From Ascidiella aspersa (taxonomy: Eukaryota), in NCBI GenBank assembly GCA_963924565.1, contig OZ004615.1, forward strand, positions 7,998,001 through 8,062,000: a stretch of 64,000 nucleotides of DNA, written 5' to 3'. How positions within the stretch are numbered: position 1 is the stretch's first letter; each line of letters opens with the position of its first letter. This document shows positions 28,461 through 60,700 of the stretch, in pieces. The position numbers and the translations under genes were made by a program. Under the pieces are notes generated by a model. It worked only from the letters and a program-made list of their open reading frames with translations. It searched no databases and was not told the origin of the DNA.

Positions 28461-30023
28461 TCTTTGTAATATATATGAGGTCTTGACAAAGTTTTTGCGA
28501 CGAATCCCGAACGATGTATAAACTTCGAATAGTGTGAGCTTACACTAGCGGGTACATGTTTTGGTGCTGAATTGCTCGGAAAACAACAGGAAATGTTCAA
28601 AATGTCAAGGAACGTAAACTAAGATCCTGTTTAATTATCAATTAATTTTTGTTCAAACTGCTGAATTCTATTTTCTATTTCATCTTGCCATTAATGATTA
28701 TATCCAATTGTTTCTGGAAATCACCATCCGTTAGGTTAGGGTTTCTCAACCGTGGCCCCCCACGAAGCGGTTGTTGGGGGCCACGGGCATAACTCTCTAG
28801 CTGGTCGTAGTATTTCAAAAGTCAACTACTCAAGTGTCATTATTTTCAAAATTTGCCAGTTCCAAATTGGAATCGGATTCTGCCGTTTATATCGCAAACT
28901 GGAACCGAATAAATGTGTTCGTTTTATGGCGGAAGCTTACGCGTAATCGAAAATACGTGAGTGGCAAGTTTGGATTAACGCTGCATTTCGTTGTGGCGAA
29001 ACATTTACTGTGTCGCTTCGTGTAACCATGTAGTGCGGCGTTAGCGCTATTCTGGTTGACCAAATACTTTCCGATAATTATAACCTAAGCCTAATTATTA
29101 AGTATCCATCAAATGCTGTTGGGCGAGTACCTAACGTGTAACGCCAGGTGTGGAAATTTCGTTTTAAGTTGCAAAAGAAACATTTCATCGTAAACTTGCC
29201 CAAGCGCGCTACGGGTTAGTCCAGATCAACTTTAGGCCAGTATTCAGCGAGCTAATACGCCACAGCGTAATTGTGACGTAATAGTAACGCAATAATGACA
29301 GTGGTAGCTTTGTATTCTTTGCAGATTTTGATTGCCTATAATTAACATATCACAATGAACTAGAACTAGAGCACAATATTGTTTTGTGTTGCACATACTA
29401 TATAAGCAAAATATAAGTTTTGGCAACAGCCTCGTGTTTCTATCATGTTTTAGGTTTTGTTTAGTTTTTTTGTGTAGTTATGCACTCCAATTTAACCAAT
29501 TTATTTAAGTGGAAGTTGTTTAGAATCTTAATAATTTTAATTTAAATTTCGATTACAATATGTAAAACTTAAACGACTCGAACGACATGGCAAAATTAAG
29601 GTGTGCGATTTAAATAAGCAAGGCGGTTATCCGCGTGGTGACGCAAGAGTGCATCTCTGTAGTTTTATCTATGGATATTGTCGATGTACTCTGCTGAATT
29701 GTTTAGAAATCAGTTCTATTGCGTTGTACATTATTTACTGCGCTTCTGTTATTACAAAGTGAAAGTTACTTTCCTAAAAAAATTCCTATTCCGACCATCA
29801 GGTATCCCTTTTGGTTTTCCTGTCATGGCCTGTCAACCCGTCTTGGCATATCATTAGACCAACTTTAAAAGGGAAAAAACAACATTTATAAACAGCAAAA
29901 GCAATGTTTGATTGATTTTAAAACAGGCCTTGAAACCAATAAATAATATATATTGTTTTAATAAAAGCTTGAGAAGCGCACCGCTCCGAACAAAAATCAG
30001 TCAGCAAGGTGTAAAACTTTAAT

Positions 30024-30064
30024 ACAAATATGCATTTCGCCTATAAATGGCATCATCAGTTTGT
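30024..30064 (-). ncRNA. minimal type I hammerhead ribozyme (inverted arm copy)
   Basis: Exact reverse complement of 33325-33365. Confidence 0.85.
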
Positions 30065-30436
30065 CTGTACAAATAAATAGTAAAAAATTAAAATATTAAA
30101 ATATAAATGTAAAATAAATACATCCAAGATGAACAAAGACAAAGACAGTCTGCGTATAAACCCCAACCACTACTGTAAAACAAAAGCAAAAGGAGCATGC
30201 GATACGTGTAGCGGCCACAGAAAGCCACTGATAAAAACACGGCCCAGAGGGAAGCGGTATGAGAATCAGTGACGTAGCAAAACACGGTAGATAAGAAAAG
30301 GTGGAAAGGCAAAAACAACCTAAAACCACAGTTAGACAAGAAAACGGATATGACTCACATTCCGAAATGGAACGGCACAACGCAAAAACGAAAAAACAAA
30401 TCCGCAAAGATATATATAAAAATATATATAAAAAGG

Positions 30437-31326
30437 CTACCGAATTTGGGGCAATATCATTTTTTGAATGTTAATTGAGGCTCTGGTGAGTTTGAGCCAT
30501 TTAGCCTCACATTCATCGAGCTTGCTGGTGTCTGGCTCTTCAACGAAAATTACCGTAAAACATTCGGCAATATGCGGATGTTTCTTTAACTTCTCGCCAT
30601 GGTAGGTTGCGTAGTGGTGAAGCAGCGCTGCGTTGTCGTTTGTTGTTGCTGAGTTAAATGTATTCCAGGTCGTTCGGTGTGCGTTCCACCTAACAGAAAA
30701 CCTGTTCTTGGTTTGACCGACGTACTGGGCAGAGCAGATGTTGCACGTTGCCACGTAAATTCCGTGGTTTCTACAATTAAGGCTTTGCCGGAGCTCTATG
30801 GTCTTACCTGCAGCCTTAAGTTTACTCGATTCACCAACCATCCCTTTGTGTCCCCCATGGTGACCGCAGAGTGCGCATTTGCCGCACGGCGTTGACAAAC
30901 CGACTGCATTGCCAAAGGTGTGCGCAAGTTGTCGGTAGTTAGTAAGAAGGTTACCGAGTGTATGAGGCCTTTTGTATACTATTTTAACTCGTGGTTGAAG
31001 CGCCTTTTCTTTGTTTGAGAGCCTGAGTAGATGAGCGAATGGAGTAGCCCATGCGACAACACGGTCTTTCGTCTTTTCTTTAGTGTGTCGGAGTCTCTCG
31101 GTCCACGATTTAGCCTCATTAAGGTTGTAATCCGTGAGGCCAGCGGGAAAACAGGACTTCCTGCATTTCATCTTCAGTTGCTNNNNNNNNNNNNNNNNNN
31201 NNNNNNNNNNNNNNNNNNNNNNNNNNNNNNNNNNNNNNNNNNNNNNNNNNNNNNNNNNNNNNNNNNNNNNNNNNNNNNNNNNCCGATGGATATGAAAATG
31301 ATATCATCAATAAACCGCTTGAAGAT
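30437..31326 (-). pseudogene. inverted, more truncated copy of the Penelope-like ORF (from the FIDD motif to the stop; interrupted by the N gap)
   Basis: The 30437-31171 ORF translation is identical to the C-terminal 244 aa of the plus copy; 31283-31326 encodes IFKRFIDDIIFISI. Confidence 0.9.
31183..31282. other. assembly gap (100 N) inside the inverted arm
   Basis: The flanks map to 32207 and 31889 of the plus arm. Confidence 0.98.
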
Positions 31327-32952
31327 CTTGCATCTTGCCAATTAACGGATATCCCTACCCGCCTGCTTCAGTCTGCTGGAAACACCTACTGCTCCCGTTA
31401 TACAGCATTAATTGAAAATATCCTGAAGCCAATCAGTGTAGCATACTGCCGGAATATACTCAATGAATATTGCCAAGACAGTAAGCACTACATCACTGAG
31501 CTAATCAATTGGAAGAACGGCGTAGCAAAAGAAAGTCTAAAGGCGGAGGATATCTACATTGTGGCAGCAGATGTGGTAGCGCTTTATCCTAGCGTTAGCA
31601 GACAGCTCATAAGGCGTTCCCTAGCCCGCGCGTTAGAGCTACACTCTGGGTTAAACCCTGTGGGCTGTAAATGTCTCCTGGATTTTACACTGTTCACGAT
31701 GGACAATGTTATTGTCCAGTATGACGGGAGTTTTTATCGTCAGAAAGAGGGTATTATAACAGGCGACAATCATTCCGTCTCAATAGCCAACATTGCCATG
31801 CACTTCATCGTTGAATCGATCGCAGACACGTTAGGCACGGCTCAAATCTTCAAGCGGTTTATTGATGATATCATTTTCATATCCATCGGGGTCAATACCA
31901 CGCAAAGAATTAGATCTGCGCTTTTGTCGGCATTCTCCAACGAGGGACTGCAATTAACATTTCGGGTTTTTTGTTCGGATTACCCTAAATATGACGTTGA
32001 ATTTCTCGATGTGCTTCACGCTCACTCTAAGACGGCTTCACTAGGATTCACAACTCGGGACAACGTTAAGATCACAGCAAAAAATAGATGTTTTTTGCAT
32101 GGTTCCTCTTACCATCCATTGCATATTTACAAATCTATTGTGTTGGGTGAAGCAAGCCGCCTCAGGAGGCTTAATGAATCCGATGAGGACTACCACCGAA
32201 GTCTAGAGCAACTGAAGATGAAATGCAGGAAGTCCTGTTTTCCCGCTGGCCTCACGGATTACAACCTTAATGAGGCTAAATCGTGGACCGAGAGACTCCG
32301 ACACACTAAAGAAAAGACGAAAGACCGTGTTGTCGCATGGGCTACTCCATTCGCTCATCTACTCAGGCTCTCAAACAAAGAAAAGGCGCTTCAACCACGA
32401 GTTAAAATAGTATACAAAAGGCCTCATACACTCGGTAACCTTCTTACTAACTACCGACAACTTGCGCACACCTTTGGCAATGCAGTCGGTTTGTCAACGC
32501 CGTGCGGCAAATGCGCACTCTGCGGTCACCATGGGGGACACAAAGGGATGGTTGGTGAATCGAGTAAACTTAAGGCTGCAGGTAAGACCATAGAGCTCCG
32601 GCAAAGCCTTAATTGTAGAAACCACGGAATTTACGTGGCAACGTGCAACATCTGCTCTGCCCAGTACGTCGGTCAAACCAAGAACAGGTTTTCTGTTAGG
32701 TGGAACGCACACCGAACGACCTGGAATACATTTAACTCAGCAACAACAAACGACAACGCAGCGCTGCTTCACCACTACGCAACCTACCATGGCGAGAAGT
32801 TAAAGAAACATCCGCATATTGCCGAATGTTTTACGGTAATTTTCGTTGAAGAGCCAGACACCAGCAAGCTCGATGAATGTGAGGCTAAATGGCTCAAACT
32901 CACCAGAGCCTCAATTAACATTCAAAAAATGATATTGCCCCAAATTCGGTAG
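31327..32952 (+). CDS. Penelope-like RT + Cys-rich linker + GIY-YIG endonuclease ORF, 5'-truncated
   Basis: Frame is open from the junction at 31327 (LASCQLTDIPTRLLQSAG...), extending the 31561 ORF. RT motifs ADVVALYPS, YRQKEGIITGDNHSVSIANI, KRFIDDI, VEFLDV; thumb FLHGSSYHP..KSIVLGEASRLRR; CGKCALC..LNC linker; GIYVATC..C..YVGQT..R...H GIY-YIG. Confidence 0.93.
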   Translation, partial: LASCQLTDIPTRLLQSAGNTYCSRYTALIENILKPISVAYCRNILNEYCQDSKHYITELINWKNGVAKESLKAEDIYIVAADVVALYPSVSRQLIRRSLARALELHSGLNPVGCKCLLDFTLFTMDNVIVQYDGSFYRQKEGIITGDNHSVSIANIAMHFIVESIADTLGTAQIFKRFIDDIIFISIGVNTTQRIRSALLSAFSNEGLQLTFRVFCSDYPKYDVEFLDVLHAHSKTASLGFTTRDNVKITAKNRCFLHGSSYHPLHIYKSIVLGEASRLRRLNESDEDYHRSLEQLKMKCRKSCFPAGLTDYNLNEAKSWTERLRHTKEKTKDRVVAWATPFAHLLRLSNKEKALQPRVKIVYKRPHTLGNLLTNYRQLAHTFGNAVGLSTPCGKCALCGHHGGHKGMVGESSKLKAAGKTIELRQSLNCRNHGIYVATCNICSAQYVGQTKNRFSVRWNAHRTTWNTFNSATTNDNAALLHHYATYHGEKLKKHPHIAECFTVIFVEEPDTSKLDECEAKWLKLTRASINIQKMILPQIR

Positions 32953-33324
32953 CCTTTTTATATATATTTTTATATATATCTTTGCGGATTTGTTTTTTCG
33001 TTTTTGCGTTGTGCCGTTCCATTTCGGAATGTGAGTCATATCCGTTTTCTTGTCTAACTGTGGTTTTAGGTTGTTTTTGCCTTTCCACCTTTTCTTATCT
33101 ACCGTGTTTTGCTACGTCACTGATTCTCATACCGCTTCCCTCTGGGCCGTGTTTTTATCAGTGGCTTTCTGTGGCCGCTACACGTATCGCATGCTCCTTT
33201 TGCTTTTGTTTTACAGTAGTGGTTGGGGTTTATACGCAGACTGTCTTTGTCTTTGTTCATCTTGGATGTATTTATTTTACATTTATATTTTAATATTTTA
33301 ATTTTTTACTATTTATTTGTACAG

Positions 33325-33365
33325 ACAAACTGATGATGCCATTTATAGGCGAAATGCATATTTGT
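33325..33365 (+). ncRNA. minimal type I hammerhead ribozyme in the Penelope-like 3' region
   Basis: acaaa-CUGAUGA-u-gcc(auuuaua)ggc-GAAA-ugca-UA^-uuugu: 5-bp stem I, 3-bp stem II, palindromic AUGCAU stem/loop III typical of the minimal hammerheads of Penelope-like elements; predicted cleavage after 33360. Confidence 0.85.
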
Positions 33366-34768
33366 ATTAAAGTTTTACACCTTGCTGACTGATTTTTGTT
33401 CGGAGCGGTGCGCTTCTCAAGCTTTTATTAATAAATTTTAGAACTTTTATCGTCGGCATTATGTGTTCTGTTGGAGGGCCAGATTCTGTTGTTAATACAC
33501 ATACAAAGCATATATTGTTTTACTTTGAATATGTGGATGCAAAAATCATCCAATCTTGTATTTTCCTTGAATATGTTTTAAACAAGTGGCAACCAACTTA
33601 TCTTTGAATATTTGTTTTAAAATAAATAGAAAATACTATGAGTAGTAGAACGGCCTCATCGCCATCTTGAAATATATCAACAACAAATGATTTCGATTCT
33701 AGAGCAAAATGCAATTTCTGCTAAATTAGCCTATATTTAATGCACTTTGGGGGGGGGGGGGCAAAAGTGCCCTTTTCATGAAAAATAGTATATTGCTTTC
33801 ACAACGTTAAATATTATGCGACGGAAATTATAAAGGGGGTAGGGATTGAGCTACGGAAAAATGCAAAAAAAATTCGTAAAATGACATGCTTGACACTTGT
33901 TAAAACATTTTTGGTACCATTCTAAGCCAATCTAGAGGGCGTGGCCGCAAAAAATTTTCCGGGGGAATACCCCCGCATCCCCAATATTTCGGCTCGCTAC
34001 GCTCGCTTGCGGTCTATGTTGCCCTTAACAAAAAAGTCGCCCCCTTGCTCGCAATCGATCCGGCGTCCCTGCTTATTAGGCTTGTTATGCCTGTAATCAT
34101 GACCTGAAAAAAATACTCGATTTAGTTTTGGTCGATTGACGTAATACGAAAACAAAATGTCGGATAATTATTTTATGTATTTAAAAAACGTTTTCGGGTT
34201 TTCGCCTTAGTTAACAAGGATGTTTATTCTAAACAACACCAAACTATTTCCTTCACCTCCAACTAGCTATAGCCTATACTGCATAAGGAACGTAGCATTA
34301 CACCACGGAGACAAATGCTGTTGATTTACAGGTTGTAGCAAACCTTCGAGGAGCCAATATTTCTGCAAAGCAATTAATCTTTTTTAAATAACCCCGAGCA
34401 TTTTTCCAATCGACTTTTTGTGTTTGTAAAATTTAAGCGATGCAATTAAAACTAAATATTCTACCAAGACTGCTGTGATAAGTGATAGCATTGGTTTGGC
34501 GATAATAGAACATTTGTAAATTGAACTGTGTTATCATAAATTTGTGAATGTTAATACATTTGTCTATATATAAACTTTTCGATGTGCAATGTCGTTTGTC
34601 GTTTTTTACAGTTTGCGAATTGCAAAACGCGCACACCCAAAAACACCAGTTCTAGAGGGGCCGAAACAGTTTTCTAGTTTTTTAGATACCTCTGCATATT
34701 TTACTGAATGTTTATAAATATGTGGATGGTGGATAGCGTGTAAAGAGAATTCGAATGTTGTTTTAAAG

Positions 34769-35530
34769 TAGGGGTCGGCAACCTACGGCCCGCGGGCCAG
34801 ATCCGGCCCGTCTATGTAATTCATCCGGCCCGCCGCCTCTTTGACAAATTAGACAAATTAGAGTTCATTTCACATACTTTTTGACTATTTTAACTACGTA
34901 AGTTAGAAAAATATTCGCGCTTCGCGCGAATGATTTTTATACGTCCGGTTTGTTTACGTTTTCATGCTGTCTTTTCAACCAAATCAGCGCTTGTTTATTG
35001 TTGCGCCGTGCAAGGCTACCAAGTGCGTCTCGGAAAAATTGAAAACGTATTCAAAAATATTGCACATGTATATTTTAACATTTTTTTCTTTTTCTTTTTC
35101 GGCAATGTAATAGAAACTTTCAAGAAATTGAAAAGAAATGCCGATATACCCCCCAAAAAATCGCGCTCGCTTCGCTCGCCAAAAGCGTCCTGACTTAAAT
35201 AGCTTAACCAGACTTAGATAGATTAACTTGATATGTTATCGCGCTTCCCTCAAATAAGTCTTATTACACTTTTCATTAATAGTATGGATTATGACGTGTG
35301 AACTCGAATTTTAAACCAAACAAACGCTGTTTTTTGCGCTTTGCGCTTTACTGCCTGTTTAAACGTAGTTAAATACGTCTGAAAGTGCAAAAAATAATCC
35401 GAGGCCCGCCTGATTCACAGCTGTTCTCACATTTTAATAACACAATTCTTAGTTAACATTTTGTGCGGCCCGCAGAGACCTTTCTGAGTTTGCTTCTGGC
35501 TCGCGACTAGACAAAGGTTGCCGACCCCTG
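34769..35530. mobile_element. hAT (Buster/Charlie-type) MITE
   Basis: TIR TAGGGGTCGGCAACC / GGTTGCCGACCCCTG; TSD TTTTAAAG. Confidence 0.9.
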
Positions 35531-36412
35531 TTTTAAAGGCTACTCTGCCACACGTATGGCAGCAGCACCGCGCAATGTATAAAATCGCGCGACGCCAAGC
35601 AGAAAGAGAGCATTGCGCCGTCTTTTTCAACAATTATTATTATGCCGCACATAAATGGCTAAAAATATTAAACCACGTCGCAGAAGTTGAAGTGAATTTA
35701 CAAACATCCTGGTCACGGGATTTTAAATGATGGCAAGTTAACTGCTGATTATTTTTCGGGAAAATCATGTCAAGATACTGTGCCACAACGAACTAATCCT
35801 CTGCAGCTGACTTGAACCCAATTTGTCTGCTGAAAGGCCGTAAATGATTACGCGAAAAAGTTTACTTGGTTTTCACTTATTTGTGTACACTGTGTGCTCA
35901 TTTAAAAAACCGAAGGATAGATTGTTAAATCTGAATAAATCTAATAAAGGCAAAATCAACAAAAACTGTACCTTGACCTTGTGTGCGTTCGGCGTATTAA
36001 TTATATTTAGTTTAACTTCCCGTCTTGCTATTAAGATTGAAAACCATTATTGGATAGTTCAGACGAAATATGACATTTTTTAATAGATTTAACAGCTTCT
36101 TTAAAGTGAAAAAACATCGGTTTAAACCGCGCACACCCGATATATTTTGGCGGTCAACCACTATGCCGCAGTGCACTTAATCCAACCACGACGGTCGACG
36201 CGCAGTTTTGAAAGAGAAACTAAACATTGACGTTGAGAATGCGCTCCTTTTCTCCCACGAGCGACCACCCTGGCGGTTAGCGCCTTGCTCGTTATCTATT
36301 GTGTATCTTTCATTGCAGCTATATTCGATCCAGATGAGCGATTGGTGGGGTTAAATTCAAGAGCCAACCATCGTGGTTATTTTTGAAACCTCCCTAGCCC
36401 GCACAACGCACG

Positions 36413-36419
36413 TATAAAA
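36413..36419 (+). promoter_or_regulatory. TATA box of distal SDR-A promoter
   Basis: TATAAAA starting 53 nt upstream of the ATG of exon 1a; similar spacing at the proximal promoter. Confidence 0.55.
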
Positions 36420-36465
36420 CGATTGCCGTAACGCCCCTCGGGCAAGTCAAGTTAAAATCAGTGTC

Positions 36466-36524
36466 ATGAATAGCTTGGAAATTGTCTGGAACTTTTTAAG
36501 TCCGCTGCTGGAAGCATTATTCAG
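36466..36524 (+). CDS. alternative (distal) first coding exon 1a of SDR-A, N-terminal membrane anchor
   Basis: 59-nt ATG..AG|GTGAG exon encoding MNSLEIVWNFLSPLLEALF(R). Same length, phase and MN/W8/L14/E16 pattern as exon 1b (41410) and SDR-B exon 1 (51706); in frame with the exon at 42594. Confidence 0.78.
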
Positions 36525-39500
36525 GTGAGCTGCTGTGTGGAAGCATAATCAATTAATCAAAGTAGAATTCGACGCTGTGTTGAATTTAACAGAAAAAACA
36601 ATTTTCGGTAATATTTTGTTAAACCCGCTGCGGTTTATTAGTTCTGAGAAAAATGTATAAAGTTCATAGTTATACAGTCAATATTCCAACGCCAAAATAC
36701 ATATAATATTAACTATAATATATTTTCAAATTAATACCTATAGTATTCAGGAATAGCGGTAGACGGCCATAGAGGAGAATAATAATAATGAATCAAGTAA
36801 TATTTGTTTACTTTGCCTTGTCATCAGCTATGATATTTAGAGTTTTGGTTAAAATAAGTCAAAAAAATATCAGCTTAATGGACGCAATTTGCACAATTTT
36901 CAACCAAACATGCACACACGGATTTCAGCTATATAAGACCGAAATAAGAACAACATCAACACCCGACTAAATTGCAGTTCGGAATAAGACCAAAATAGGA
37001 CTAATATCTAAAAGTCGTAACAACGTGTAAATCGGAATAAGTTCTAAACCCTTCGGAGTGAGACTTAAATTAAATGGTGATCTTTTTACTGAACCCTAAA
37101 ACTTTATTATGTTGTTGCTTTTAATGCTATGGTATTATAGTTTTTTCTGCTTTAGATTTTATTGCCTTTCACGTCGTATTGTGTGTTTCCATAAACCCAT
37201 GCTTTTTTAACATTGTTTTAAAAGGGAAATGTTAAGAATGACGGCATAAAGATTAATCAAAACATGAAGCTACAAGTTACGTCAAAACGTTAAGGTAGTT
37301 TTATGTTAGAAATACGAAAAACACTCACGCTCCGCGTAAAAAAGCCTTAGTATCATTTAAAGTTGCCTAAACTTTTATTTAGCTGACTTAACTACCAGGA
37401 GTATAAACATACAACAATTTTTTTCCATCTTTACACAAAAGTGAAAAGGGATATTTTCCATACTTTTGGAACCCATAAAATACGATTGGTAATGTGTTAT
37501 TGGCAGTTTGTTTTAGCATAAAAAGTCTTGGCAGCTGTTTCGAAAAATATATTAAGCAAAAAAGTACAACGCACCAATGTCAAGGTTTCTTTCTTCGAAA
37601 AAGCTATTAAAAGTAGGCAAAGTTCTCTAAACCGCTATTGCGAGAGGCAGCATTCAGGACTTTTCCGGCCTAAGAAATTTTAGAAAGTGTGCCAAACTCC
37701 AAAATGACATAAAGAGAGTTGATCGATACATATTATGTAGGTGTGCCGCCTAATTGTTTTAGCTTTATTGGTGTGCCGCAAGTGAAAAAAAGGTTGCATC
37801 AACCATGCTTAAGAGATTGCGATGAGACACACTGTGCCTTCGAGCAATGAATTTAACAAAATGGGACAAGACTTACTAGAAATCTAAGCCAGATTCGCGC
37901 GAAATTGCCCCAAAAAACTAAATTTTACTTAAATTTATTTGCATAAACAATTAAACGTAATGGTAATGCTGATTTTTTTTAGTTTAATTTTACGTTTTTG
38001 CGAGTTGATAATTTTATTGATAATCACTTTAAATATTTTTTATTTACAAAACACTGTAAAATTGGGTGTGGAGCGTTAGTCGAGCTCATATCCTGTATGT
38101 ACCACAAGCAAATTCAGTGAGAGGAGTTAGAAAGCTGAATAATACAACGTTCGGTGGCGATAAAGAGGCAAAGTAACGCATCATATCATTCCAAGCACTG
38201 CTGGAACACTAATCTTTCTCCATTAACAGTTTAACCCTAAACAAAATTAATACAATAATCGCAAGCCGTTTAAATTAAAGTTCCACGTTCAAAAATTGAT
38301 ACATAGAACACAAAAATTCACGTAAGACGTAAAAATTACTTTTTCCGCTTTCCGGTTTTGCCTTGAAGAATGACTTCAACTTTTAAAGCACAATGACACT
38401 ATTGTGAAACTGCAAACTACAGCTAGGGGCATAGATAAATATATACTGCCTGGAAAGTTTGCCGAACGTTGTAATATACCTTCTGGCAATTTCAAAGGGT
38501 ATCAGCCAGGCTTGAGATAATTTTTAATTATGATACAGTGGGAAATATTTTCATTAAACTTGGTAATTGTACTTTTTTTAATTGTTTAGTACATAAAAGG
38601 GTTTAAAAACAGCCTTTTTGCAAGTTTAAAGCAAAGGTCTCGTAGTTGGTAGGTCGCGTTATAGTTTGTTGGTGGCTGCTATTGTACGCCACACGAAAAG
38701 TCCGCACAGCTATTATCACTATGCTAACATGAATCAAAGTGTTTGCTCGCCGGCCATATGTCTTTGTTTTACTGGAAGTGTTTACCTTTCTTGCGAAATC
38801 ACGGTCGCAAGGTTTCCGAGAAACGAAACGCTTTACGGGAAAATTGCACTTGCACTATTGAGTGCTTCGCCATAGCTGCATTCACATCAGAAGCAATGGA
38901 ACTAAATCCATGGTGAAACTTCGTTTAAACATTTAACTTGTGTGATAACTAAGTGCCATTAAAGTGTTTAACCGTAATTTGACACGTAAAATGCAATGTT
39001 TCGTAAATTGTTACTTCAGGAGGCACTTGTAAACGGTCTAACCATGCATATTGTCTCCCAAAAGCAAGAAAAGCAAATGCGATATGTGTTTTTATTACCG
39101 ATTTTTTTCTAGCATTACTTTTACGTTTCTATTACACAGACACATTACTGCATTCTTTTTAAAGTACTGTACAATCAATCGGACAATAATCCGACTGTGA
39201 AAATGAAAATAAAAAATAAAGCCATTTATATTGTAATAATGTCATAGTATAAAAAACGTTCAAGACATCCTTTGTCGGAAGAAGTTAGATATAAATTTAA
39301 AACATTACATAGTTTAATGAACTAGCGGATTCGCAACTGGGTGCCGTGAGACCATGCCAGGTGTGCTTGCGATTTTTAAAAGGTTTTAAGCTTGCGTTAT
39401 TAAAAGAAACGTTTCAATAATTGGACGAATTAAGATCAAAATGTGCACCAAAGAAAGCGATTTGCAATAGTGGGTACCTTTCCTAATATTTAAAACTTTT

Positions 39501-40439: not shown

Positions 40440-40452
40440 TATATATATATAA

Positions 40453-40482
<30 letters not shown>
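40440..40482. repeat. imperfect (TA)n microsatellite
   Basis: Direct reading. Confidence 0.9.
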
Positions 40483-40483
<1 letters not shown>

Positions 40484-41354: not shown

Positions 41355-41361
41355 TATAAAA
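41355..41361 (+). promoter_or_regulatory. TATA box of proximal SDR-A promoter
   Basis: TATAAAA starting 55 nt upstream of the ATG of exon 1b. Confidence 0.55.
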
Positions 41362-41409
41362 GTACACAAGGTTTTGCAGTGGCAGACAGTCGCGTGACCT
41401 ATAACAGTC

Positions 41410-49853: not shown

Positions 49854-51030
49854 CAGGGTTCGGCAACCTTTTTTGCACTGCGGACCGGTTTAAAACTGAA
49901 ACTTTGTCGCGGCCCGGCCTTACAAAAACAACAAATGCCAGTAAAGAAAATTAATTAACTTTTTCAATGCGATATCGGCAAACAATTGCTCCCATCTAAG
50001 AATTATTAAACCTAATGAAACCCTTGGGTGGCATATGGCCCGCCAAGCAATTTTACTCAGCCCGCGGTTCATGTCAATAAAACTTTAACGGTTTTTCTTA
50101 ATTTACACTTGTATATCATTAAATTACAATTGAATATCATTATTACCTATTCCTACTCTTACCAGCTTGTCAAAATAAAATATTTAAAACTTATTTTTAA
50201 ATAGTCACACTTTGTATAATAATCATTTCAGACCCGTTTTTTAACCAGGCCCCACACGACACTTTCTATATAGTTACGTAATACAAAAACTTGAAAATAA
50301 TATTGGCAATATGAAAAAGTACGAACCACAGACCTGCACTTAAAAAGTATAGAAGATACATATAAAAGGATACCAGATTGGCTTTTTGACAACAAATTTA
50401 AAAAATCTGTTTTTTTTCAACGTGGTTGATGTTAAAAAAATCATTTAGACTTTTTTTTTTCTGTCATTTTTATCGAGGCTAAAACTAAAAATGTAGAGGC
50501 TAAAACTTGCTAAAACTAATTAAAATGCATACGTTTTTTGAAACCTTTCCTTCTTAAATATTAAAAAAATAAATCATTTCATTATGGTACATTCTTTATA
50601 AACATTGTTTGCATGAATTTATTCTATTGCACTTTTGGGTGAGAACGCTTGAATAATAAAAATCATGACATTTTAGCGGTAGCCCATTTTGCGATATATT
50701 GTCAGTACTAGGAATTAGATTTTGCAATAAAAATATGCATTTTTGGATGTTGAGAGCGATTTGTGTAACTCATGTGGATACAGCACACTAGCTGTTTTGA
50801 ACCTCACGAGAGCCTGTTACTGATTGCGTATCATACCAGTCAGTATATTTAAACAAAAGTTAATGTGTTTTGAATATAAAAATACGTCTGTTTGTAAATG
50901 ACCTTTTTCCAGGTTTTTATGTACAGTTCGGGTTTAAACCAAAATTTTAATTTGGCAACCCTGCTACGGACCGGTAACAAACTCCTCGCGGACCGGCACC
51001 GGTCCGCGGACCAGCGGTTGCTGAACACTG
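49854..51030. mobile_element. hAT MITE (probably with nested fragments)
   Basis: TIR CAGGGTTCGGCAACC / GGTTGCTGAACACTG; TSD CTTTAGAT; GCGGACCGG subterminal repeats. Confidence 0.88.
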
Positions 51031-51188
51031 CTTTAGATGACGGGCATTAAAAAATAGTTGCTAGATTTCTGACACGTTGGATGTTTGACTTTTGACCAAA
51101 TCAAATATTATTCTTCTTATAGCAAGTCGCCTTTAAATTACAGCACTTAACCTTAACCCTCCGTTTGTTGATGCTGGTTCGTTTAGCA

Positions 51189-51530
51189 CAGTGATTCTCA
51201 ATTTTTTTTTCTTTCGTGGCCCATTTTCGTTGCAAAATAAAGCTGTGGCCCAAAAAATTTTATGTAAGAAAAAAAATAAATAATAGGTTTAGAACAAAGA
51301 AGAAAAACATTTTTTAAAACATAATGTTTATTCAACCGGGCATTATTGAAATACTGCTGCTGAACAATAAATCTACATTTCATTTACATGCGTTCTCAGT
51401 TTCTTTACAAGCCTGTAAAATTAAGTATGGGACACAAATAAAACTAAATTCTTCAATAAATGTTGCTTTAAAAAAATGGTCTGTGGCCCACCTTAAAGTG
51501 TTTCCATGGCCCACTGGTTTACAACCGCTG
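51189..51530. mobile_element. hAT MITE just upstream of SDR-B
   Basis: Ends CAGTGATTCTCAA / TTTACAACCGCTG; TSD GTTTAGCA. Confidence 0.8.
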
Positions 51531-51705
51531 GTTTAGCACAAGGTACCTGTGAGATTTTTTAATTTCCGTTGAGTGGTGACACAAGCTACAATCAAACGCG
51601 TCGAGAGAAAAAGGCAACGGTGCCACAGCTCTGTACAGAAATTCGTTGCCTCCGGCAAAGCATCTTGATACTACATGTAAGCTGCTAAAGTTAAAAACCA
51701 GAAAA

Positions 51706-54700
51706 ATGAATGTATTTCAATTCTTGTGGGTGGCTATCAAGGTCCTAATTGAAACAATTTTAGGGTGAGTTTTGCAAATGTTGCTTGTTTGATGTGCTCA
51801 TTTAAAATTACAGATACGCAGAATTCGGGTAACCGCAAATTACTTTTCGAGTTTTGTACAGTGATTGCTCGTTTAAATTGGTTTGCAAGAAAAGGGTGAC
51901 TTGGAATAGGATAACGCTAACGAATCGCGGTCTTCATTCGCAGCGTGGCTTATTAATCGGTTTGGTTTATTTACACAGCGCCGTTGTTATCAGACTCACT
52001 CATTTGAAGTAACTCTTTAGCTGCAATGGCTTTTTAACGTTAGCCTACTGACCTACTCGAACCTATTATTATACAGATGGATTAATAAGGTCATTTAACT
52101 AAAGGATATATCCACATTATTTAACGACATCATAGTTTCAAAGTTTTAAGGTTGATGAGCATCTTCTTCAATATTGCGATTACGTTTTTACTGAAGTGTT
52201 TTCATTTATGTCGATTTCCGTGTGAAGTACGAAATAGCGCTTCTGCTCTGCAATCGAGCACAATGGTTGAAGGTTATAGTAAGACGCAGTAAAAATATCA
52301 AACGCAATAAGAAAACCCATACTTTATTAAGTGCTTTCTCAATCTGTTGAAAATAAATAGAGTTATTCGAAACGTGCAAAATGATACCTACTTCCGTATG
52401 GGCTTTGATATTTTTACTACGTCTTGGTCCGCTATCATTTGTTATCTTTTTGTGACGAAACAATTTCCTGCGTAACGCAGTGTGGTAAACAGGCTGAGTA
52501 CTATTGTATAGGTTTTTCCTGCTCTACATGCGCGTGGGCCGTGGGTACGATTGACGTACGTTGATGTGATGGCGGTTTGCTTTAAACTAGGAAAGCATAG
52601 ATAGAAATCAACGCATCGTTATTAAATAGTTGTTTGAATGGCAAGATTACACAAAACCTACTGATACTTGATATCCGGTGGACAGTAGGCCGCCTTAGGC
52701 TTCAGGCAGTCTGGCAGTGTTTTGTTTTAACACATGGCGAGCCGGGTTAAAAATATCTGTTTGGGTAAATCTTCAAACTGCCATTAAGACTAGTACAAAA
52801 ATTATTACAGCTGAAAGGTAAATTTGTAGATTTTTGTAATACTTTTCTCCCCTAAATACAGCAAACTTACTTACTATAATGGTGACTTCAACTAATGTCC
52901 AGGACGGAAAATTGTCTTATACCATAGTATGTTAAACGACCTTCAAGCTTATACTGCATACCATATCCAGGATCAGAAAGACAGTGCTTCGTACTGTCTA
53001 TGCATTTGCATAGAGCGCACATGACGTAAAAGGCTCCAGATTAAGTTGGAGCAGAGGTTATAGGGCAGCTTTGTTAAAGCGCCTATTGTATTGCTTAAAA
53101 CCAAACGTTAACTGTTTTTTTGTAACACAAGCTGCGATACGGATAATAATCACAGTGTTTGCTATATGTTTTATTAGTGACCTGGTTTGCTTTTAATGAA
53201 AGTCTCTGGAAAATAACGTACGGGTGCGATGTCTTTGTGTAGTTCAGGACTTTGTTTTGCATAAGGTTGACATTTGCATATCGAAAGGAAAACAAAGCTT
53301 GAAGTACTGTGTGTAAAATTAATACAGCCTAACTGACTAACCCTAAAAAACTCATCGCGACCCCAGTTTTGTTAGTCATGATTTAGATTTGTACAAAATT
53401 TAATCCATTGGGGGGCCGGGGGCCTCCCCACCCCTCTGGGGGGCGCAATAGGTCAGCAAAGGGCGTTTGAAGGACATAAGTTAACGACGCAAAAATATTT
53501 GTTTTTATGGCTAATCCACAATAGTTTTCATGAATATCTTTCCCGATTTTCGTTGCAGTCAACTTTAGATATAAAAATAGTATAGTACTTGTACGACAAG
53601 CCTGCTATTTGTCTGTTCCTTTTCATCCAATGAACCCAATTGTTTTGCTTGGCAATGTTGAAAATCATAGTTTTGCCAAAATATTTTCCTCCTATGCCAG
53701 CAAATTATGTTTGTTCAGCATTCCGTCCGAAGTCTATGTTTGCCCTTGTCCAAATATCCAACTTTGCGAACAACGACGTGAATCTCGACAGTGTTTGCGC
53801 AAACGCTAAACACCTTTGCTTGAGTAACGTTCAACCTGTAATTAGACAACCAGTGTAACACTTCTAAAAAAATCAGTCCTATTACATTGTTTTAAACGCT
53901 AATATACAAAAAATACCTTTTTTAGTGGTGAGAAAACACTCTAAATTCTTGAATTAACTTTAACCAAAACCTCTAATCTATTTAATTTTCGAACCGTTTG
54001 GCGAAAAGAAATAGGCCTGAAACGCTTCATATAGTGAATTGCCATTAAGAAAACCCTAATTTTATTTAATCTAGACCAGGGCACTTCCTTAAATCATGTT
54101 AATGAGGCAGTAAAATACACCAAGCATACGTTCAAATTTAGCATGTACGTTCACAGATGGATATTGCCAGCCAGATACAAATCAGTTGAAGGCGAAGTTT
54201 GTCTGATTACTGGTGCTGGCAACGGAATCGGAAGACTGATCGCAATCGAATACGCCAAGAGAAAAGCAAAGCTTATTCTATGGGACATCGACAAAACAGG
54301 TAATGATAGGGGAAATAAGGGGTTGGATAAATGTGTTTTTACTCTTGATATACGATTTAAAGCGGTATAATGGAGTTCCGGACCTCTGGTAAAACTCGTT
54401 CTCCTATAAGCATTAGGACACGTTAGTCTAATAAAAAAAACGTTTACAAATAGTTAGAAACGCTCCTGACTAAATGTCATGAATTATTACCGGGCCATAT
54501 TCCGCGTAAAAGAAACTTGATGCGCTTGAACGAACACATATCGTGTCGCTTTACTGATTTTTTAATTAGCTTTTACTGTTTTGTTGTAACACGAGACTTC
54601 TAGGTATTGAGTGGAATCGTATGGTGTGTAGCGTTTTCGATGGAAGGCCCCAGTCTTAGACGTCACAGTTTATATTACCCTACGCTACAGGAAACTCCTG

Positions 54701-57700
54701 GAATTCCTAACCTTGTTTGTATATCACCTGGCCAAACCTGTCTAAACCTCATGAACACCCGCAAACTACACGTTCGTTAGAAAACGACGCTTTATCGCCT
54801 TTAGAATATGTTTAAACAATTAACTGTCCCGCCGGTTCGTAAATAACGTTACTCCCAAGGGCCGCTGTAAAAGATGTGAAACTAGAAATGAGAATTCTGA
54901 CTGTGCACTGTATTCGATGGGTAACAAATGGAAATATGGTTGGAATTACCAAGTTGTGGTGTCCAGGTCAAAAAAGAGCCAACAAATAAGGAATGTTGAT
55001 CATAATATATATTTAGTTAGCGCACTTTCGAAATAATGGTGAAACCCACATTGTGCCCTTACATAATCCATAATCCTGCTAAACTTTCGGACAATATCCA
55101 CTACTTAATGTGCAAGATAAAATACTGCAGTAGGTCCCATGTGGGCAATAGCACACAAAACCTTTACATAATATGAGGTGACCGGCAAAAGGGAAAGGCA
55201 ATCAAAATCACACGTAGGCCTATTGTTAAATTATCTGGAATCGCTCCCGTTAGTTTGGTAAACACTCTTCCATTTTCTTAGGTATTTGGTATAGCTCAAG
55301 CTAAAGCATGAACTGAGTTCGACAGCATTTGAGGCACCACCGGGCCCCTACGGAGCCATTTCGTCATGTTTGACTCGCGAGCAATGTAAAACAACGGCTT
55401 ACTGCGTCAGAAAGGTCACGTTCACAGAAGCAACAATGTTTTTAAACCAATTCTAACCGTCGAGAAGCAGAGTTTTGTTCCAAGGACAGCATAACCTTGA
55501 CAGATAACGTTAAATTATCGCATCTCTATGGCAATTTACGTTTTTTCATCACCACAATAATCTAAACCCGGCTTAAACCACTATTATTCAGCTTTTTAAT
55601 TATCATGCCCACCTACCATGGAACTCTCAACAATTACACACTCTTTGCTAACCTAGAGAATTCCGGTGGCACTATATAAAGACAAATTATATTGAGTTCT
55701 CGACAAGCTTTCGCACAACCGTGCTTCATCAGGTCAAAGTATAAATGAAGACAATTGAAAAGCACGTAAAAGCACAAGCGCGAGTAAAAGGCTTATACCA
55801 GGTTTTCTTAATCATGGTCCTCGGCCCCCCTGGGGGGCCACGGAGCGGTAATTGGGGGGCCACGGGCATAGGCGTAGCCAGGGGGACACATGGTCATTTC
55901 TCCGAAAAAATTATAATATATTTTACTCCTAATCATTTTTTGTAGCATTTATAAGCAGTACACAACTGTCGATCACAGGCATGCCACACCTTCAATTGTC
56001 AGGCACTGTTACGTCACAAACGATATAGTTATTATGTTTGCTGTATACTTATTAAAGTAGTTTTATTACTTTTAGTTATTTGTTTTTTTCTTTTTAAATA
56101 GATTTTAAGCATTGTGTTAAAACTCGACCAGTTGCTGAGCGAAATATTTTGCTAGTATATTTATTTGTTTTTGATACGGCAGTTAGTCAGTTGTAACGAG
56201 TCTCGCTGGCGGGAACCGACTAATAGACTTTTAATCGTAGTGTCATTACTGATTCGTTGTAAATATAGTTATTTGTTTATGTTTTATATAAAGTCGATTA
56301 ATCGCTGTGAGATAACAGTTTTAGTGTCAAGTTATATGTTTGCCTACTCAGCGTGTCTTGTCTTTTCCTGCATCAAGAAGCGTTGTTTTAAATCAAATAT
56401 TCTTACTAGTTCAAGTTCAAAATTTTTGCGCCACACATATTTCGGCTGGCTAAGCCACTGACCACGGGCACAACTCTCTAGCTACGTATTGCAAAACCAG
56501 TCACCACTTTCAAAAATTACCAGTTAACTTTATGACTGTAAAACTTTTTTGTAATGTTTTATAACACAGTTTTCTAAAACGTTTTTAGACGAGAGATGTT
56601 AAAAGTAGAAGCGTGGATCCTTTCTTTCGTTTATCGATAAACAGTCCGTAGGAAAACGCATGAAGTACGCTGGGTAACTCAAGGCCATTTTAGGACAATA
56701 CTCAGCTAGGTTGGTTATGTAAATTAATAGTAATTCATAAACCGAAAATCCTAAATCATCTTGACGAATGTAGTAACATTGGCTTGGCTCAGTACAAATT
56801 ATAGCAAAAAAACAAATTTTGAGACAACTAAGTGCATTTATTCGTTGATTAATGTCTGTATTTGATATTAACGTGAAACAAGAAAAAATACTCGTAGAAA
56901 CAACGCTAAATATTTTTTTATAAGCAGGGTGGCGAGTGTTAAGAACCTTTCAAAGGGGGCCACGAAGCATAAAAGGTTGAGAACCACTGGCTTATACTTT
57001 GACCTGATGAAGCACGGTTGTGCGAAAGCTTGCCAAGAACTCAGTACAATTTGTCTTTAGACAGTGCCACCTGAATTCTCTATTTGGAATTAGACAAATA
57101 CGGCCATTTACAAAGTTTGCTAACCTATAGTCTATATAGATGCTTTTTATTGCGCTTGACGTGAATACTTTTTTAAAAAGCGATTTAACATCAAGATTAT
57201 ACCAGCCCTATATTCAAAGTACACCAACAACAGATAACAGTATTATATCATACTTTAAAATCCGACCGTATCAACTATAAAATTATTTGTAAAAAACAAT
57301 GTACGGACCGTTGAGACTGTGCTGTGTTTGGTTTTGGCCCCCGACTGGAAATAGGTTGCCCATCCCTGCTACACAACTATGTCATAGGCAGTGGTTCAAG
57401 CGTAAGTATAAAAGAAAGCTTCGCGACACAATTTCCTTCACTTAACATTTTAATAAAAAATACATTAGCAATAATAAGTTCGAATGTAATTAATAAGCGC
57501 CTTATTTTGTTTTTTTCGCAATGTTATTAAATGTTCGAAAAAAACGTACCAATCTTAGTCCACCTAACCATACAAAAGTATATTTGCAGTCGGCGCCCTA
57601 ACAAAATTAAACCGCGCGCATGTGTTGAGAAACACTGTGCTAGATTGAGGCCGTAAATCAGCGTTTTTAAATATTTTTGTCATCGCGAACCAAATACTAT

Positions 57701-60700
57701 AAGCGTAAGTTTAACAACAACACTTGGCGACCAAACGATCTTCATGATTTTTTAAGCAAACAAAAATAATAAACATAGCAGACCTAATTTCCAATTTAAT
57801 TAATATGAGTAATTTATTCGTAGTGTTCCGGCAATTTTTCTCAATTAAAGGACAAATCTTGCTCAGAACCAATCTCAACCAATTTAGCCATGTAAACTAT
57901 TGCAGCAGTCGGCGACCAAACCAAATCAATTGGCGAACCAACTATAGGTCGCGACCTATAGATTGAGAAACACTCGAGGTAATTATTCGACCATTTTCTT
58001 CTTTTGTTTTACAGGCGTGGAGGAGACAGGAGCAATGGTGAGGGAGCTGGGTGCTCAGGTGTTCACTGACGTGTGCGACCTTTCACAGCAAGAGCAAATC
58101 GCGAAAGCCGCCGAAAAAGCGCGAACAATTTTCGGTGACGTCACCATTCTCGTGAACAACGCCGGTGAGAAAGTTCGTTTTTTTTCGGTGCATATTCTCC
58201 CATAAGTATATGTTGCTGGACACTGCGTCTGTAAACCTTTAAGCAGAGGTTCTTAACCAGGGGTTCGTGTACCCCTTGGGGTTCGGTATACTACTAGTTT
58301 TAGGGGGTTTATCAAGGTATAAGTATTAGTGTAAGTTTAAGGAGTAATCCATTTAAAAAAAAGAGTTTAATTAAAAATAAAACGGTATTGCACTGAATGT
58401 ATTTAGGCTTTATTTTACTTTCACAGTTTTCGGCCTGAAATCAGCATTTTTCGGCTATTTTTTCAGCCTGAAATTAGCAGTTTATTGTATTGTGACGTCA
58501 ATTTATGACGTCATCTTTGAATTTTTTTGGTCTAACATTGTCCACGCGAACCAAAAATTTGTTTAGTGGTCCGCATGAAAAGAACCACTGCTATAGATAC
58601 TCTATTTGAATGACGGTGACATTCATGACTTCGTATTTTGCGGTCATTTAATTTAGTTTAAATTGTTTTTGACAACTCGACCTAAATGTTTTCAATTATG
58701 TTAAATCTTAGCGTACATTTAGAAACAACTGCTGGCTTTAAGTTTTATATTAAAAACATTTGTATTTAATTTCCCAATAAATTCGATTAAACTGTACCCA
58801 AACCGAGGATATTTCAACGTTATTTCGGTCTAACTCTAAATTCGACTAATATGCTATATCAAAACAGCGTAAAAATAGATCACAAATCGTGACTATCGTG
58901 TCGTTGTGTCAAGGAAATCATTTAAACGCAACACAACCCCCTCACAAAGTTCAAAGTACAAGCATTACTGTGCTGTGTCAAGCTATTGTATTCTGATTGG
59001 AATGTGGATTCAGGAAATATCAGCCTCAAATCAAATAGCGTTTTTTAAGTGAACTTTTAAAGCCAAATGAACTAATATCCATGGAAATAGAGAGGTCTAA
59101 CAAAAACTCTATATCCCTTTACAGTAAACTCTCGTGTCCAGTAGTGCAAGTAAAACCGCCACCCTTAGATAACGTTTTGCACGCTCCGTTAACTCTTACT
59201 AAAAGCCTGCCCTATAAACAGAAGCTCCAAATCACGGTTGAAATCTTTCACCCACTTTATAAAATCACACGTGTGTACAGACAATTTAACTTGGAGGGAA
59301 TAATTTTTGCAGCATTGTTAAGTGTGCACAACGCTAAGTATGTGTTTCCACAACAGAATCATGTCCTTCAAAGGAACACATAAACGCCGACCTTGAAAGT
59401 TCTAGAAGTTTATAATAGCTTGGCCGCACAATAATAAAGTCAGCCAGGTTAAAACGTGTAAATGGAGATATGCATTTTAAGTGAATGGTATCATCAGTTT
59501 ATCTGTACAAATAAATAGTAAAAAAGTAATAAAATATAAAAATGTAAAATAAAACATTTTGACTGATTGTTGTTCGAAGCAGTACGCTTATCAAGCTGCT
59601 TGTAAATGGCGAGATATACATTATTAAACATATTGTTCTCAATAGGTAAACGAAGCGTTACCAGGCACTGTACGGTTTAAACTTAGAACGTCATTATGTA
59701 GTGCAAAGTGGGTAACATTCTGCCCGCCATTTTTTTACAAAATGGTAACTAGACGATTCCTTATTTTTTTGGTTGTTTCAACTATCGTAAATGCGATAAG
59801 TTCCTTCGCTTTGCGCAAATCTTGTTCATGCATCTAGTATGTTTGCTATTTGAGGCAATATTGTCAGCCTTAAGGTGTCATGCCTACCCTTGATTGGAAA
59901 TATTAATAATTAATGTTTTGCCAAATTATTATTTCTAAATGCATTCCATTGCGCTTCACACGATCCATCCTATCTTTTCAATATGAACTAGAGTTTAACG
60001 GGGTGACCCATTTCCCATTGAAAACCCTTTGTTCGCCCTGATTAACAGTCTATACAGTTGTTATAATAAAATTTACCCCGAAAATGTATGCTCAATTGGC
60101 ATGTATGCACACGAAAATAAACTAAAATTCGCTTGCTTATAGTTGTTGGTTTCCGGTCAACTTTGGAGTGGGTTTTCAAAAAGCATAAAAAGCATGTTTG
60201 GACTGCTTTAGTAAATTTACGCCAATATAAATTGCTATAGCTTTTAAAATCCAGATGCGTAAAATCAAACTATTCACTTTCCATTTCGTGTGTACCAACA
60301 TCAAAGCAAAGCTTGACCGAACTACGGATATGGCAACATAAGGCCACGCGTGGATTTCCCATTACCTCGGCAAAGGTTGCTTTGCAGACAAATAGCTGGA
60401 ACACGGATGCTTGTTTACCACCAAACAGTCGAAAAGGGAAGCGTGAAATTTGAGCTCGCGCCTGTGCGTTTCCAAACTTGCCAGCACAAGGAAACCGACA
60501 ACAACCTGAACCTAAGCCAGTTGACTTTCGTATGTGTTGTGCAGCCCAACAAACCCATGGAAATACCCATGAAAACATTTGACCGCCTCTATTAAAACAT
60601 GTACAAATGTTTTAGCCTAAACTTTTAGCCTAGATGAAATGTGGAAAATGCGCAAGCAAAAAATTAAGTCAGCCTGTTCGCATAGTAAATATGTTATAAT

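What the first reader, a model, noticed from the sequence alone, without database searches (positions are those of the whole stretch)
29948..59597. Recurrent 'double-primed' insertion architecture in hammerhead-bearing Penelope-like elements (three insertions, two families)
Seen: the insertions at 29948-33522, 55644-57127 and 59333-59597 all consist of two 5'-truncated copies joined head-to-head, with both 3' ends facing the flanks. One arm carries extra 3' sequence (78 nt; 33 nt; roughly 85 nt in the relic) and the other stops internally. In the two insertions with a clear TSD (13 and 12 bp), the internally ending arm overlaps the TSD end by 3 and 2 nt. Known: inverted pLTR arrangements and 3' tails occur in Penelope-like elements, and L1 twin priming gives inversions that are usually not long duplications. 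Inference: both 3'-OH ends of a staggered cut primed reverse transcription independently. Because the arms overlap by up to ~1.6 kb, this needs two RNAs, a tandem or circular template, or re-copying of one RNA, which would fit minimal hammerheads that act as dimers. All priming points lie 3' of the ribozyme cleavage site (about 71 and 149 nt; 51 and 84 nt), and five of the six arms read through it, so their template was uncleaved or re-ligated.
Basis: partly seen in the sequence, partly recalled or inferred. Interest (0 to 1): 0.85.

Follow-up and report, generated by a model that had tools for sequence, protein, structure and literature searches.

The report
Two-armed Penelope retrotransposon insertions
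These are ordinary insertions of Penelope-like retrotransposons in their known inverted form with a tail at one end; a survey of this genome adds that the two arms always use two different start points, which fits copying primed from both cut DNA ends.

Summary
All three sites are head-to-head pairs of Penelope-like element (PLE) arms with both 3' ends facing outward. One arm ends at the tail site (T). The other ends about 81 nt upstream in family 1, or 33 nt upstream in family 2 (site I). Insertions 1 and 2 have 13- and 12-bp target-site duplications (TSDs).

Two corrections are needed. In insertion 2 the 1.2 kb between the arms is an unrelated nested repeat, not arm sequence. The 2-3 nt overlaps with the TSD are no more than chance and start-site scatter allow.

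The pattern recurs across the genome. In family 1, 14 sequence-checked double insertions pair T with I. All 14 single insertions end at T. About 14 more pairs fit by coordinates. Family 2 shows the same in 16 of 16 and 16 of 17 pairs. No T/T or I/I pair was confirmed, though a few cases stay unresolved.

Raw reads show both discrete ends and many inverted joints, so the architecture is not an assembly artefact.

The architecture itself is published. So is the finding that a PLE protein cuts and extends both strands from two start sites (PMC11167929). Priming at both nicks is the best model. The strict T+I pairing is the only modestly new point. No evidence links it to hammerhead dimers or RNA circles.

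The parts
29948..29960 (.). Left copy of the 13-bp target-site duplication of insertion 1
   Evidence: Identical 13-mer at 33510-33522
29961..31326 (-). Insertion 1, I arm: a 5'-truncated family-1 PLE copy ending at the internal start site. It contains the assembly gap 31183-31282.
   Evidence: Reverse complement of 32207-33431 (100% over 1225 nt) and of 31846-31889. The register implies about 317 unread bases in the gap.
30024..30064 (-). Minimal hammerhead motif in the I arm of insertion 1
   Evidence: Mirror of 33325-33365, read by hand
31327..33509 (+). Insertion 1, T arm: a 5'-truncated family-1 PLE copy (2183 nt) ending at the tail site
   Evidence: Open frame 31327-32952 with RVT_1 (below cut-off) and GIY-YIG (above cut-off).
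33325..33365 (+). Minimal type I hammerhead: helix I ACAAA/UUUGU, core CUGAUGA, extra U before helix II (GCC/GGC), GAAA, palindromic AUGCAU. Predicted cleavage after 33360.
   Evidence: Read. Features match PMC4209133. Not detected by Rfam.
33429..33509 (+). Tail of family 1 (78-81 nt), present only on the T arm
   Evidence: Raw-read loose ends at 33427/33428 and at 33508/33509.
33510..33522 (.). Right copy of the TSD of insertion 1
55644..55655 (.). Left copy of the 12-bp TSD of insertion 2. The last 2 nt could equally belong to the element.
   Evidence: Identical 12-mer at 57116-57127
55656..55792 (-). Insertion 2, I arm of the short family-2 unit (137 nt), with a hammerhead at about 55699-55738
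   Evidence: More than 40 genomic copies match this whole stretch at about 91%. 91 nt are inverted against 56992-57082.
55799..56990 (+). Nested unrelated 1.2-kb repeat X with imperfect terminal inverted repeats, flanked by direct CTTATAC (55792-55798 and 56991-56997)
   Evidence: Dozens of colinear copies elsewhere at 78-92%, none continuing into family-2 arms. Terminal alignment.
56992..57115 (+). Insertion 2, T arm (124 nt). Hammerhead 56998-57037 with predicted cleavage after 57031. Tail 57083-57115 (33 nt).
57116..57127 (.). Right copy of the TSD of insertion 2
59333..59557 (-). Insertion 3 (old family-1 relic, about 74% identity), T arm with the full tail
   Evidence: Aligns to 33266-33509
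59560..59600 (+). Insertion 3, short I arm ending near the internal site. It lies 3' of the hammerhead cleavage site.
   Evidence: Aligns to 33386 to about 33428

Best explanation
These are insertions of two Penelope-like retrotransposon families. [quoted passage not shown] Family 2 is a short non-coding unit of about 170 nt. Both show the known PLE arrangement of an inverted 5'-truncated copy plus a tail at one end.

The most likely mechanism runs as follows.
1. The element's endonuclease makes a staggered break of about 13 bp.
2. The 3'-OH of one strand primes cDNA at the tail site T. This step always happens.
3. In roughly half of events the 3'-OH of the other strand primes a second cDNA at the internal site I, about 81 nt upstream of T in family 1 and 33 nt in family 2. 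Occasionally it primes elsewhere on the RNA instead.
4. The two cDNAs are joined head-to-head, blunt or through a few bases of overlap or filler.

What is shown: the architecture, the TSDs, two discrete 3' ends, strict T+I pairing, and arm identity. What is inferred: the order of events, the use of both nicks, and the number of RNA templates.
For: - Identity: GIY-YIG lies above the Pfam cut-off, downstream of an RT match. A near-full-length copy has an 816-codon open frame. There is a tandem array with a 3422-nt period. The hammerheads have the published PLE features.
- Two discrete ends: family-1 matches end at query position 360 or at 279-286. Raw Illumina reads show heterogeneous flanks after 33427/33428 (102 reads) and after 33508/33509 (182 reads).
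- Pairing, family 1: 14 of 14 sequence-checked double insertions are T+I, with TSDs of about 13 bp. All 14 single insertions end at T and hide no I piece. About 14 further T+I pairs were found by coordinates.
- Pairing, family 2: 16 of 16 head-to-head pairs are T+I. In 16 of 17 pairs exactly one arm reads through into the tail.
- One event: the window arms are 100% identical. Two other pairs share private variants. One 12-13-bp TSD flanks four tandem units plus the inverted I arm.
- Independent templating: the I arm is longer than the T arm in 7 of 13 pairs. The joints all differ in position and are never symmetric.
- Literature: inverted copy and one-sided tail (PMC8557442, PMC3846280). In vitro cleavage and extension of both strands, two internal start sites that bound the tail, and uncleaved RNA as the main template (PMC11167929).
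Against: - No reaction was observed, so priming is inferred from end products.
- In vitro, no difference in start site was seen between the two strands. That does not predict strict T+I pairing.
- The family-1 sample came from the best-scoring candidates only.
- The head-to-head joint of insertion 1 was not directly confirmed by reads, and its I arm holds an assembly gap.
Confidence: 0.65

Rival explanations
1. Self-priming or snap-back. One cDNA is primed at the target, its 3' end folds back on itself (or an antisense template is self-primed), and the second arm is copied from the first. This was proposed for rotifer PLEs.
For: Proposed in PMC3846280 from palindromes at inverted junctions. 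One locus (C4:18900083) has an outer joint that looks like the tail end annealed to the I site.
Against: - In 7 of 13 pairs the I arm contains sequence the T arm lacks, and the T arm always has the tail the I arm lacks. Neither arm can be a copy of the other.
- No joint is symmetric or palindromic. The joints are blunt, have 1-25 nt of filler, or overlap by 3-7 nt.
- The I end is at a discrete site next to the TSD.
Confidence: 0.08
2. One priming event followed by endonuclease resolution. The tail asymmetry arises because the element's endonuclease cuts the transposition intermediate at its own tail region, not because of a second initiation site.
For: Suggested in PMC8557442. The D. virilis endonuclease needs the tail sequence to cut Penelope DNA, as cited in PMC11167929.
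Against: It does not explain how an I arm longer than the T arm is templated. The two ends coincide in kind with the two RT start sites mapped in vitro for another PLE.
Confidence: 0.15
3. Two successive independent insertions. A second copy homed into or next to an earlier copy in inverted orientation.
For: PLE proteins can nick their own pLTR. PLEs nest in each other.
Against: - A single TSD flanks the composite, and no TSD flanks either arm alone.
- The arms are identical or share private variants.
- I ends were never confirmed alone.
- The joint positions are scattered along the element.
Confidence: 0.04
4. Assembly artefact. The inverted arms are mis-joins of repeat copies.
For: Insertion 1 has a gap inside one arm. 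Another locus (C6:17290913) has Ns exactly at the expected joint.
Against: Twelve other double insertions are gap-free with intact TSDs. Raw Illumina reads contain many opposite-strand joints within the element and both kinds of end.
Confidence: 0.03

Closest known systems
[quoted passage not shown]
   Same: RT with a C-terminal GIY-YIG endonuclease. Partial tandems and tandem arrays. An inverted 5'-truncated copy beside the main copy. A short tail at only one end. Short TSDs at AT-rich targets. A minimal hammerhead in the terminal repeat. Assembly trouble at the inverted repeats.
   Different: The family-1 tail is 78-81 nt, against the usual 30-40 nt. The hammerhead and start sites lie in the 3' untranslated part, about 150 nt before the end, not at the start of the ORF as in the anole element. 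The clade was not determined.
PAc (Poseidon of Anolis carolinensis) in vitro system, PMC11167929
   Same: Two discrete internal RT start sites whose spacing equals the tail. Cleavage and extension of both target strands. Start sites need no homology to the target. Uncleaved hammerhead RNA serves as template.
   Different: In vitro, both strands used both start sites alike. In this genome the two ends of one insertion always differ (T+I), and single insertions end at T. The paper does not discuss inverted arms.
L1 twin priming
   Same: The second nick primes reverse transcription, giving an inverted 5' part. Joints show microhomology. Three or four family-1 loci here have this classical form, with the second arm starting at a random internal position.
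   Different: In the usual PLE case the second primer uses a specific site near the 3' end. The arms then overlap by up to 1.6 kb, which one pass over one RNA cannot give.
Non-LTR retrozymes and short hammerhead repeats of animals (PMC7229834; bioRxiv 10.64898/2026.07.22.740005)
   Same: Family 2 and the 187-nt family-1 short form are short, non-coding, abundant units carrying a type I hammerhead related to PLE ends.
   Different: Here they occur as dispersed TSD-flanked one- or two-armed insertions rather than tandem arrays. No circular RNA was seen.

Membership tests
Penelope-like elements (endonuclease-positive) | Single ORF with a reverse transcriptase followed by a C-terminal GIY-YIG endonuclease | tested here: met
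   GIY-YIG E=4e-6 to 7e-6, above the Pfam cut-off, C-terminal to an RVT_1 match (E=5e-5, below the cut-off). 816-codon open frame in copy C1:40946734-40949950. PLE-specific RT motifs were not tested.
Penelope-like elements (endonuclease-positive) | Tandem or partial-tandem organisation (pseudo-LTRs) and an inverted 5'-truncated copy | tested here: met
   Four-unit array with a 3422-nt period plus an inverted arm. 14 sequence-checked head-to-head family-1 insertions.
Penelope-like elements (endonuclease-positive) | Tail extension at only one end of the insertion | tested here: met
   The tails are 78-81 nt and 33 nt.
Penelope-like elements (endonuclease-positive) | Minimal type I hammerhead in the terminal repeat: extra base between positions 9 and 10.1, a G10.1-C11.1 pair, and a palindromic helix III | tested here: met
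   Both families, read by hand against PMC4209133. Rfam models give no hit. Catalysis was not tested.
Penelope-like elements (endonuclease-positive) | Short TSDs at AT-rich targets | tested here: met
   TSDs of 10-15 bp, mostly 13 bp, at 11 double and 5 single family-1 insertions.
L1-type twin priming | The inverted and direct segments are adjacent parts of one RNA, with little or no duplication | tested here: not met
   The arms overlap by 100-1600 nt in the usual form. Only 3-4 loci show the adjacent-segment form.
Retrozyme or circular-RNA replication | RNA ends at the hammerhead cleavage site, or circular junction reads | tested here: inconclusive
   One RNA-seq run shows no starts or ends at 33360/33361. 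The only strong signal is one I arm embedded in a host transcript. No test for circles was possible.

The most novel reading that the evidence does not exclude
PLE integration is intrinsically asymmetric. The two nicks of one target site use two different fixed initiation sites on the RNA. The tail site serves the obligatory first cDNA and the internal site serves an optional second cDNA. Every two-armed insertion is therefore T+I, and no insertion is I-only. This would imply an asymmetric, probably dimeric, particle that copies two RNAs or copies one RNA twice. It is a constraint that published in vitro data do not show.
Probability: 0.4. Interest if true: 0.6.

Novelty: new member of a known kind. 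Interest (0 to 1): 0.4.

Why it matters
How PLEs integrate is still only partly known. The inverted, one-sided-tail architecture has been described for about twenty years without an agreed mechanism. The first in vitro system (2024) showed extension of both strands and two start sites, but did not connect these to the inverted arms.

Two young, abundant families in this genome offer a clean natural data set. The strict T+I pairing argues for two templated syntheses per insertion and against snap-back. So do the absence of confirmed I-only insertions and the multi-unit array lying inside a single TSD. Together they give a concrete prediction for biochemical tests. On the practical side, these structures cause assembly gaps and hairpin-like 'foldbacks' that annotators could mistake for new elements.

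Tried and rejected
- Rfam, at gathering and at permissive thresholds, found no hammerhead. The motifs were read by hand instead.
- I tested whether the tail is closed by a stem between the I site (GCUUU) and the tail end (AAAGC). Folding gave z-scores near 0 for both families, so there is no support.
- Snap-back copying, successive insertions and assembly artefact were each considered and found wanting (see the rival explanations).
- Microhomology at the I joint: overlaps of 0, 1, 2 or 4 nt in 14 joints. This is at most weakly above chance for AT-rich targets.
- A fetch of 20-kb flanks failed. The remaining census therefore used coordinates from pattern searches only. I did not use patterns to read further letters.
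- RNA-seq gave no evidence on the element's own transcript ends.
- The arms of insertion 2 are only 92% alike, which might suggest two different source RNAs. It may equally be age, so I drew no conclusion.
Full report
**What is at the three sites**

Insertion 1 lies between two copies of ATATATTGTTTTA (29948-29960 and 33510-33522). It consists of a minus-strand arm (29961-31326, holding the N gap 31183-31282) and a plus-strand arm (31327-33509). The arms are joined head-to-head at 31326/31327. They are 100% identical over the 1225 nt that can be compared.

The plus arm is open from 31327 to the stop at 32950-32952. It carries an RVT_1 match and a GIY-YIG domain. A nearly full-length copy elsewhere has an 816-codon open frame. 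This is therefore an endonuclease-positive Penelope-like element (PLE).

The plus arm runs 78-81 nt further 3' than the minus arm. I call the far end T (tail site) and the near end I (internal site).

**The gap**

The letters on both sides of the gap belong to the same arm, in the same orientation and order. The register shifts: 31182 pairs with 32207, and 31283 pairs with 31889. A colinear arm would therefore need about 317 unread bases, not 100. Continuity and frame across the gap cannot be stated. I did not fill it.

**Insertion 2**

Insertion 2 lies between two copies of TTTGCTAACCTA (55644-55655 and 57116-57127), and both arms face outward. It is not two long truncated copies.

- The I arm is 55656-55792. 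More than 40 other loci match this whole 137-nt stretch at about 91%.
- The T arm is 56992-57115, with a 33-nt tail.
- The 1.2 kb between them (55799-56990) is a different repeat. It has dozens of colinear copies elsewhere that never continue into family-2 arms. It has imperfect terminal inverted repeats and is flanked by direct CTTATAC. I read it as a later nested insertion.

**Insertion 3**

Insertion 3 is an old family-1 relic. Its T arm is 59333-59557 on the minus strand. A short I arm runs from 59560 to about 59600 on the plus strand.

**Hammerheads**

Rfam finds none. Both families nevertheless carry the published minimal PLE hammerhead:
- a CUGAUGA core;
- one extra base before helix II;
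- a G10.1-C11.1 pair;
- GAAA;
- a palindromic helix III (PMC4209133).

Predicted cleavage falls after 33360 and after 57031. Five of the six arms include the site.

**Is the pattern recurrent? Family 1**

A search of the window's own genome with the last 360 nt of family 1 gave matches ending either at position 360 or at 279-286. I fetched these loci and mapped them onto natural reference copies. The results were:

- Thirteen insertions with two outward-facing 3' ends, including one whose T arm is only about 10 nt and stuttered. With the window relic that makes fourteen. All are T on one side and I on the other.
- Most have a TSD of about 13 bp.
- Fourteen single-armed insertions, all ending at T. 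None hides an I piece at its 5' end.
- Three or four loci where the second arm starts at a random internal position, as in L1 twin priming.
- One locus with Ns exactly at the expected joint.

A four-unit tandem array plus an inverted I arm (C2:30628151-30641023) is flanked by a single 12-13-bp TSD. A cDNA of more than three unit lengths was therefore laid down in one event.

Pattern searches added about 14 more T+I pairs by coordinates alone.

- 18 I-type arms with no detectable T partner;
- two pairs with no detectable T end;
- one possible T/T pair.

**Is the pattern recurrent? Family 2**

All 16 head-to-head pairs among the scored matches are T plus a non-T arm. In 16 of 17 pairs on three contigs exactly one arm reads through into the tail, and in none do both.

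**Independent check with raw reads**

About 6x Illumina whole-genome reads of the same species label were laid on 31283-33650. They show:
- loose ends with heterogeneous flanks after 33427 and 33428 (51 reads each);
- loose ends after 33508 and 33509 (46 and 136 reads);
- a 5'-to-3' rise in depth;
- many opposite-strand joints at different positions inside the element.

The two discrete ends and the inverted joints are therefore real in the DNA, not products of assembly. The joint of insertion 1 itself could not be confirmed from this output.

RNA-seq depth over the ORF is 0-2. The one strong signal comes from a single I arm embedded in a host transcript. No molecule ends were seen at the hammerhead site.

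**Mechanism**

Several facts point to one event per two-armed insertion:
- one TSD surrounds the whole composite;
- the arms are identical or share private variants;
- joint positions differ at every locus.

Snap-back copying fails for three reasons. The T arm always has the tail that the I arm lacks. In 7 of 13 pairs the I arm has upstream sequence that the T arm lacks. No joint is symmetric: joints are blunt, have 1-25 nt of filler, or overlap by 3-7 nt.

Each arm was therefore templated on its own. This is what priming from both nicks predicts. Because single insertions end at T and no I end was confirmed alone, T priming looks obligatory and I priming optional. These last steps are inference.

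Whether two RNAs, a multi-unit RNA, or one RNA copied twice is used cannot be told from these data. The array inside one TSD shows only that more-than-unit templates or template jumps occur. Nothing here supports a role for hammerhead dimers or circles.

My idea that the tail is closed by a stem between the I site and the tail end got no support from folding. The 3- and 2-nt overlaps with the TSD are within start-site scatter and chance.

**Comparison with what is known**

- The inverted 5'-truncated copy, the tail at only one end, the TSDs and the assembly trouble are described for PLEs (PMC8557442; PMC3846280).
- Dual hammerheads on opposite strands 100-700 bp apart were noted in 2014.
- In 2024 a purified anole PLE protein was shown to cleave and extend both strands and to start at two internal RNA sites whose spacing is the tail. 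It used mainly uncleaved RNA (PMC11167929).
- That paper does not discuss inverted arms. It saw no strand difference in start site.

What this genome adds is the strict T+I pairing, T-only single insertions, and a multi-unit array inside one TSD. Earlier notes of this scan on other parts of this genome reached the same classification.

**Verdict**

- These are new members of a known kind.
- Interest is moderate to low for the architecture. It is somewhat higher for the pairing rule, if a full census and a barcoded in vitro assay bear it out.

Noticed in passing
window 55799-56990: A 1.2-kb repeat (X) with imperfect terminal inverted repeats, flanked by direct CTTATAC, is nested at the head-to-head joint of insertion 2. 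Dozens of copies at 78-92% exist elsewhere, many clustered on contig C7 between 2.5 and 5.5 Mb. It is probably a non-autonomous DNA transposon.
   Followed up: partly
G000:C2:30628151-30641023 (L004-L006, L009, L027): Four tandem family-1 units (period 3422) plus an inverted I arm are flanked by one 12-13-bp TSD, (T)ATTTCTATAGAA. The whole array of about 11.6 kb plus the inverted arm appears to have been made in a single insertion. The units differ by 2-13 mismatches.
   Followed up: partly
window 33323 (raw reads); L007 and the C1:10772187 locus: A recurrent 5' boundary lies 186-187 nt from the tail end, just upstream of the hammerhead. It suggests an abundant short family-1 form (hammerhead plus tail) analogous to the 170-nt family-2 unit. 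Read depth over 33337-33494 is about 4-5 times that of the adjacent element sequence.
   Followed up: no
window 32953-32956 equivalent; loci L011, L014, L033/L047, L038: Several arms begin 549-567 nt from the tail end, directly after the ORF stop codon. This hints at a preferred RNA 5' end or a solo 3'-UTR form.
   Followed up: no
window 33318-33431 (RNA run X23): Nearly all RNA-seq signal on the element comes from one other locus, where an I arm of the short form sits inside a transcript (loose-end consensus agreement 0.98-0.99). The reads cross the hammerhead site and mostly have the first mate on the plus strand.
   Followed up: no
run X4: Contigs from a run labelled as a different organism hold family-1 sequence with only 0-4 differences per 100-700 nt. 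This is either a close relative or synonym, or a recent shared invasion.
   Followed up: no
G000:C4:18900083-18900905 (L036/L050): A complex locus. An I-type arm has an outer end preceded by a 9-nt piece of the tail end in the opposite sense, as if the tail end had annealed to the I site. It is joined to a second arm covering the adjacent upstream segment. No clear TSD was found.
   Followed up: partly
window 31183-31282; G000:C6:17290913 (L037): Assembly gaps lie inside or exactly at inverted PLE arms in two of the loci examined. This is in line with published remarks that these structures break assemblies.
   Followed up: partly
G000: C3:25487538/25488479, C1:20282147/20283209, C7:15280874/15281979, C1:28940631/28941883: Four further pairs of full-length inverted family-2 arms are separated by 0.7-1.0 kb, like insertion 2. 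Whether something is nested at the joint there as well could not be checked.
   Followed up: no
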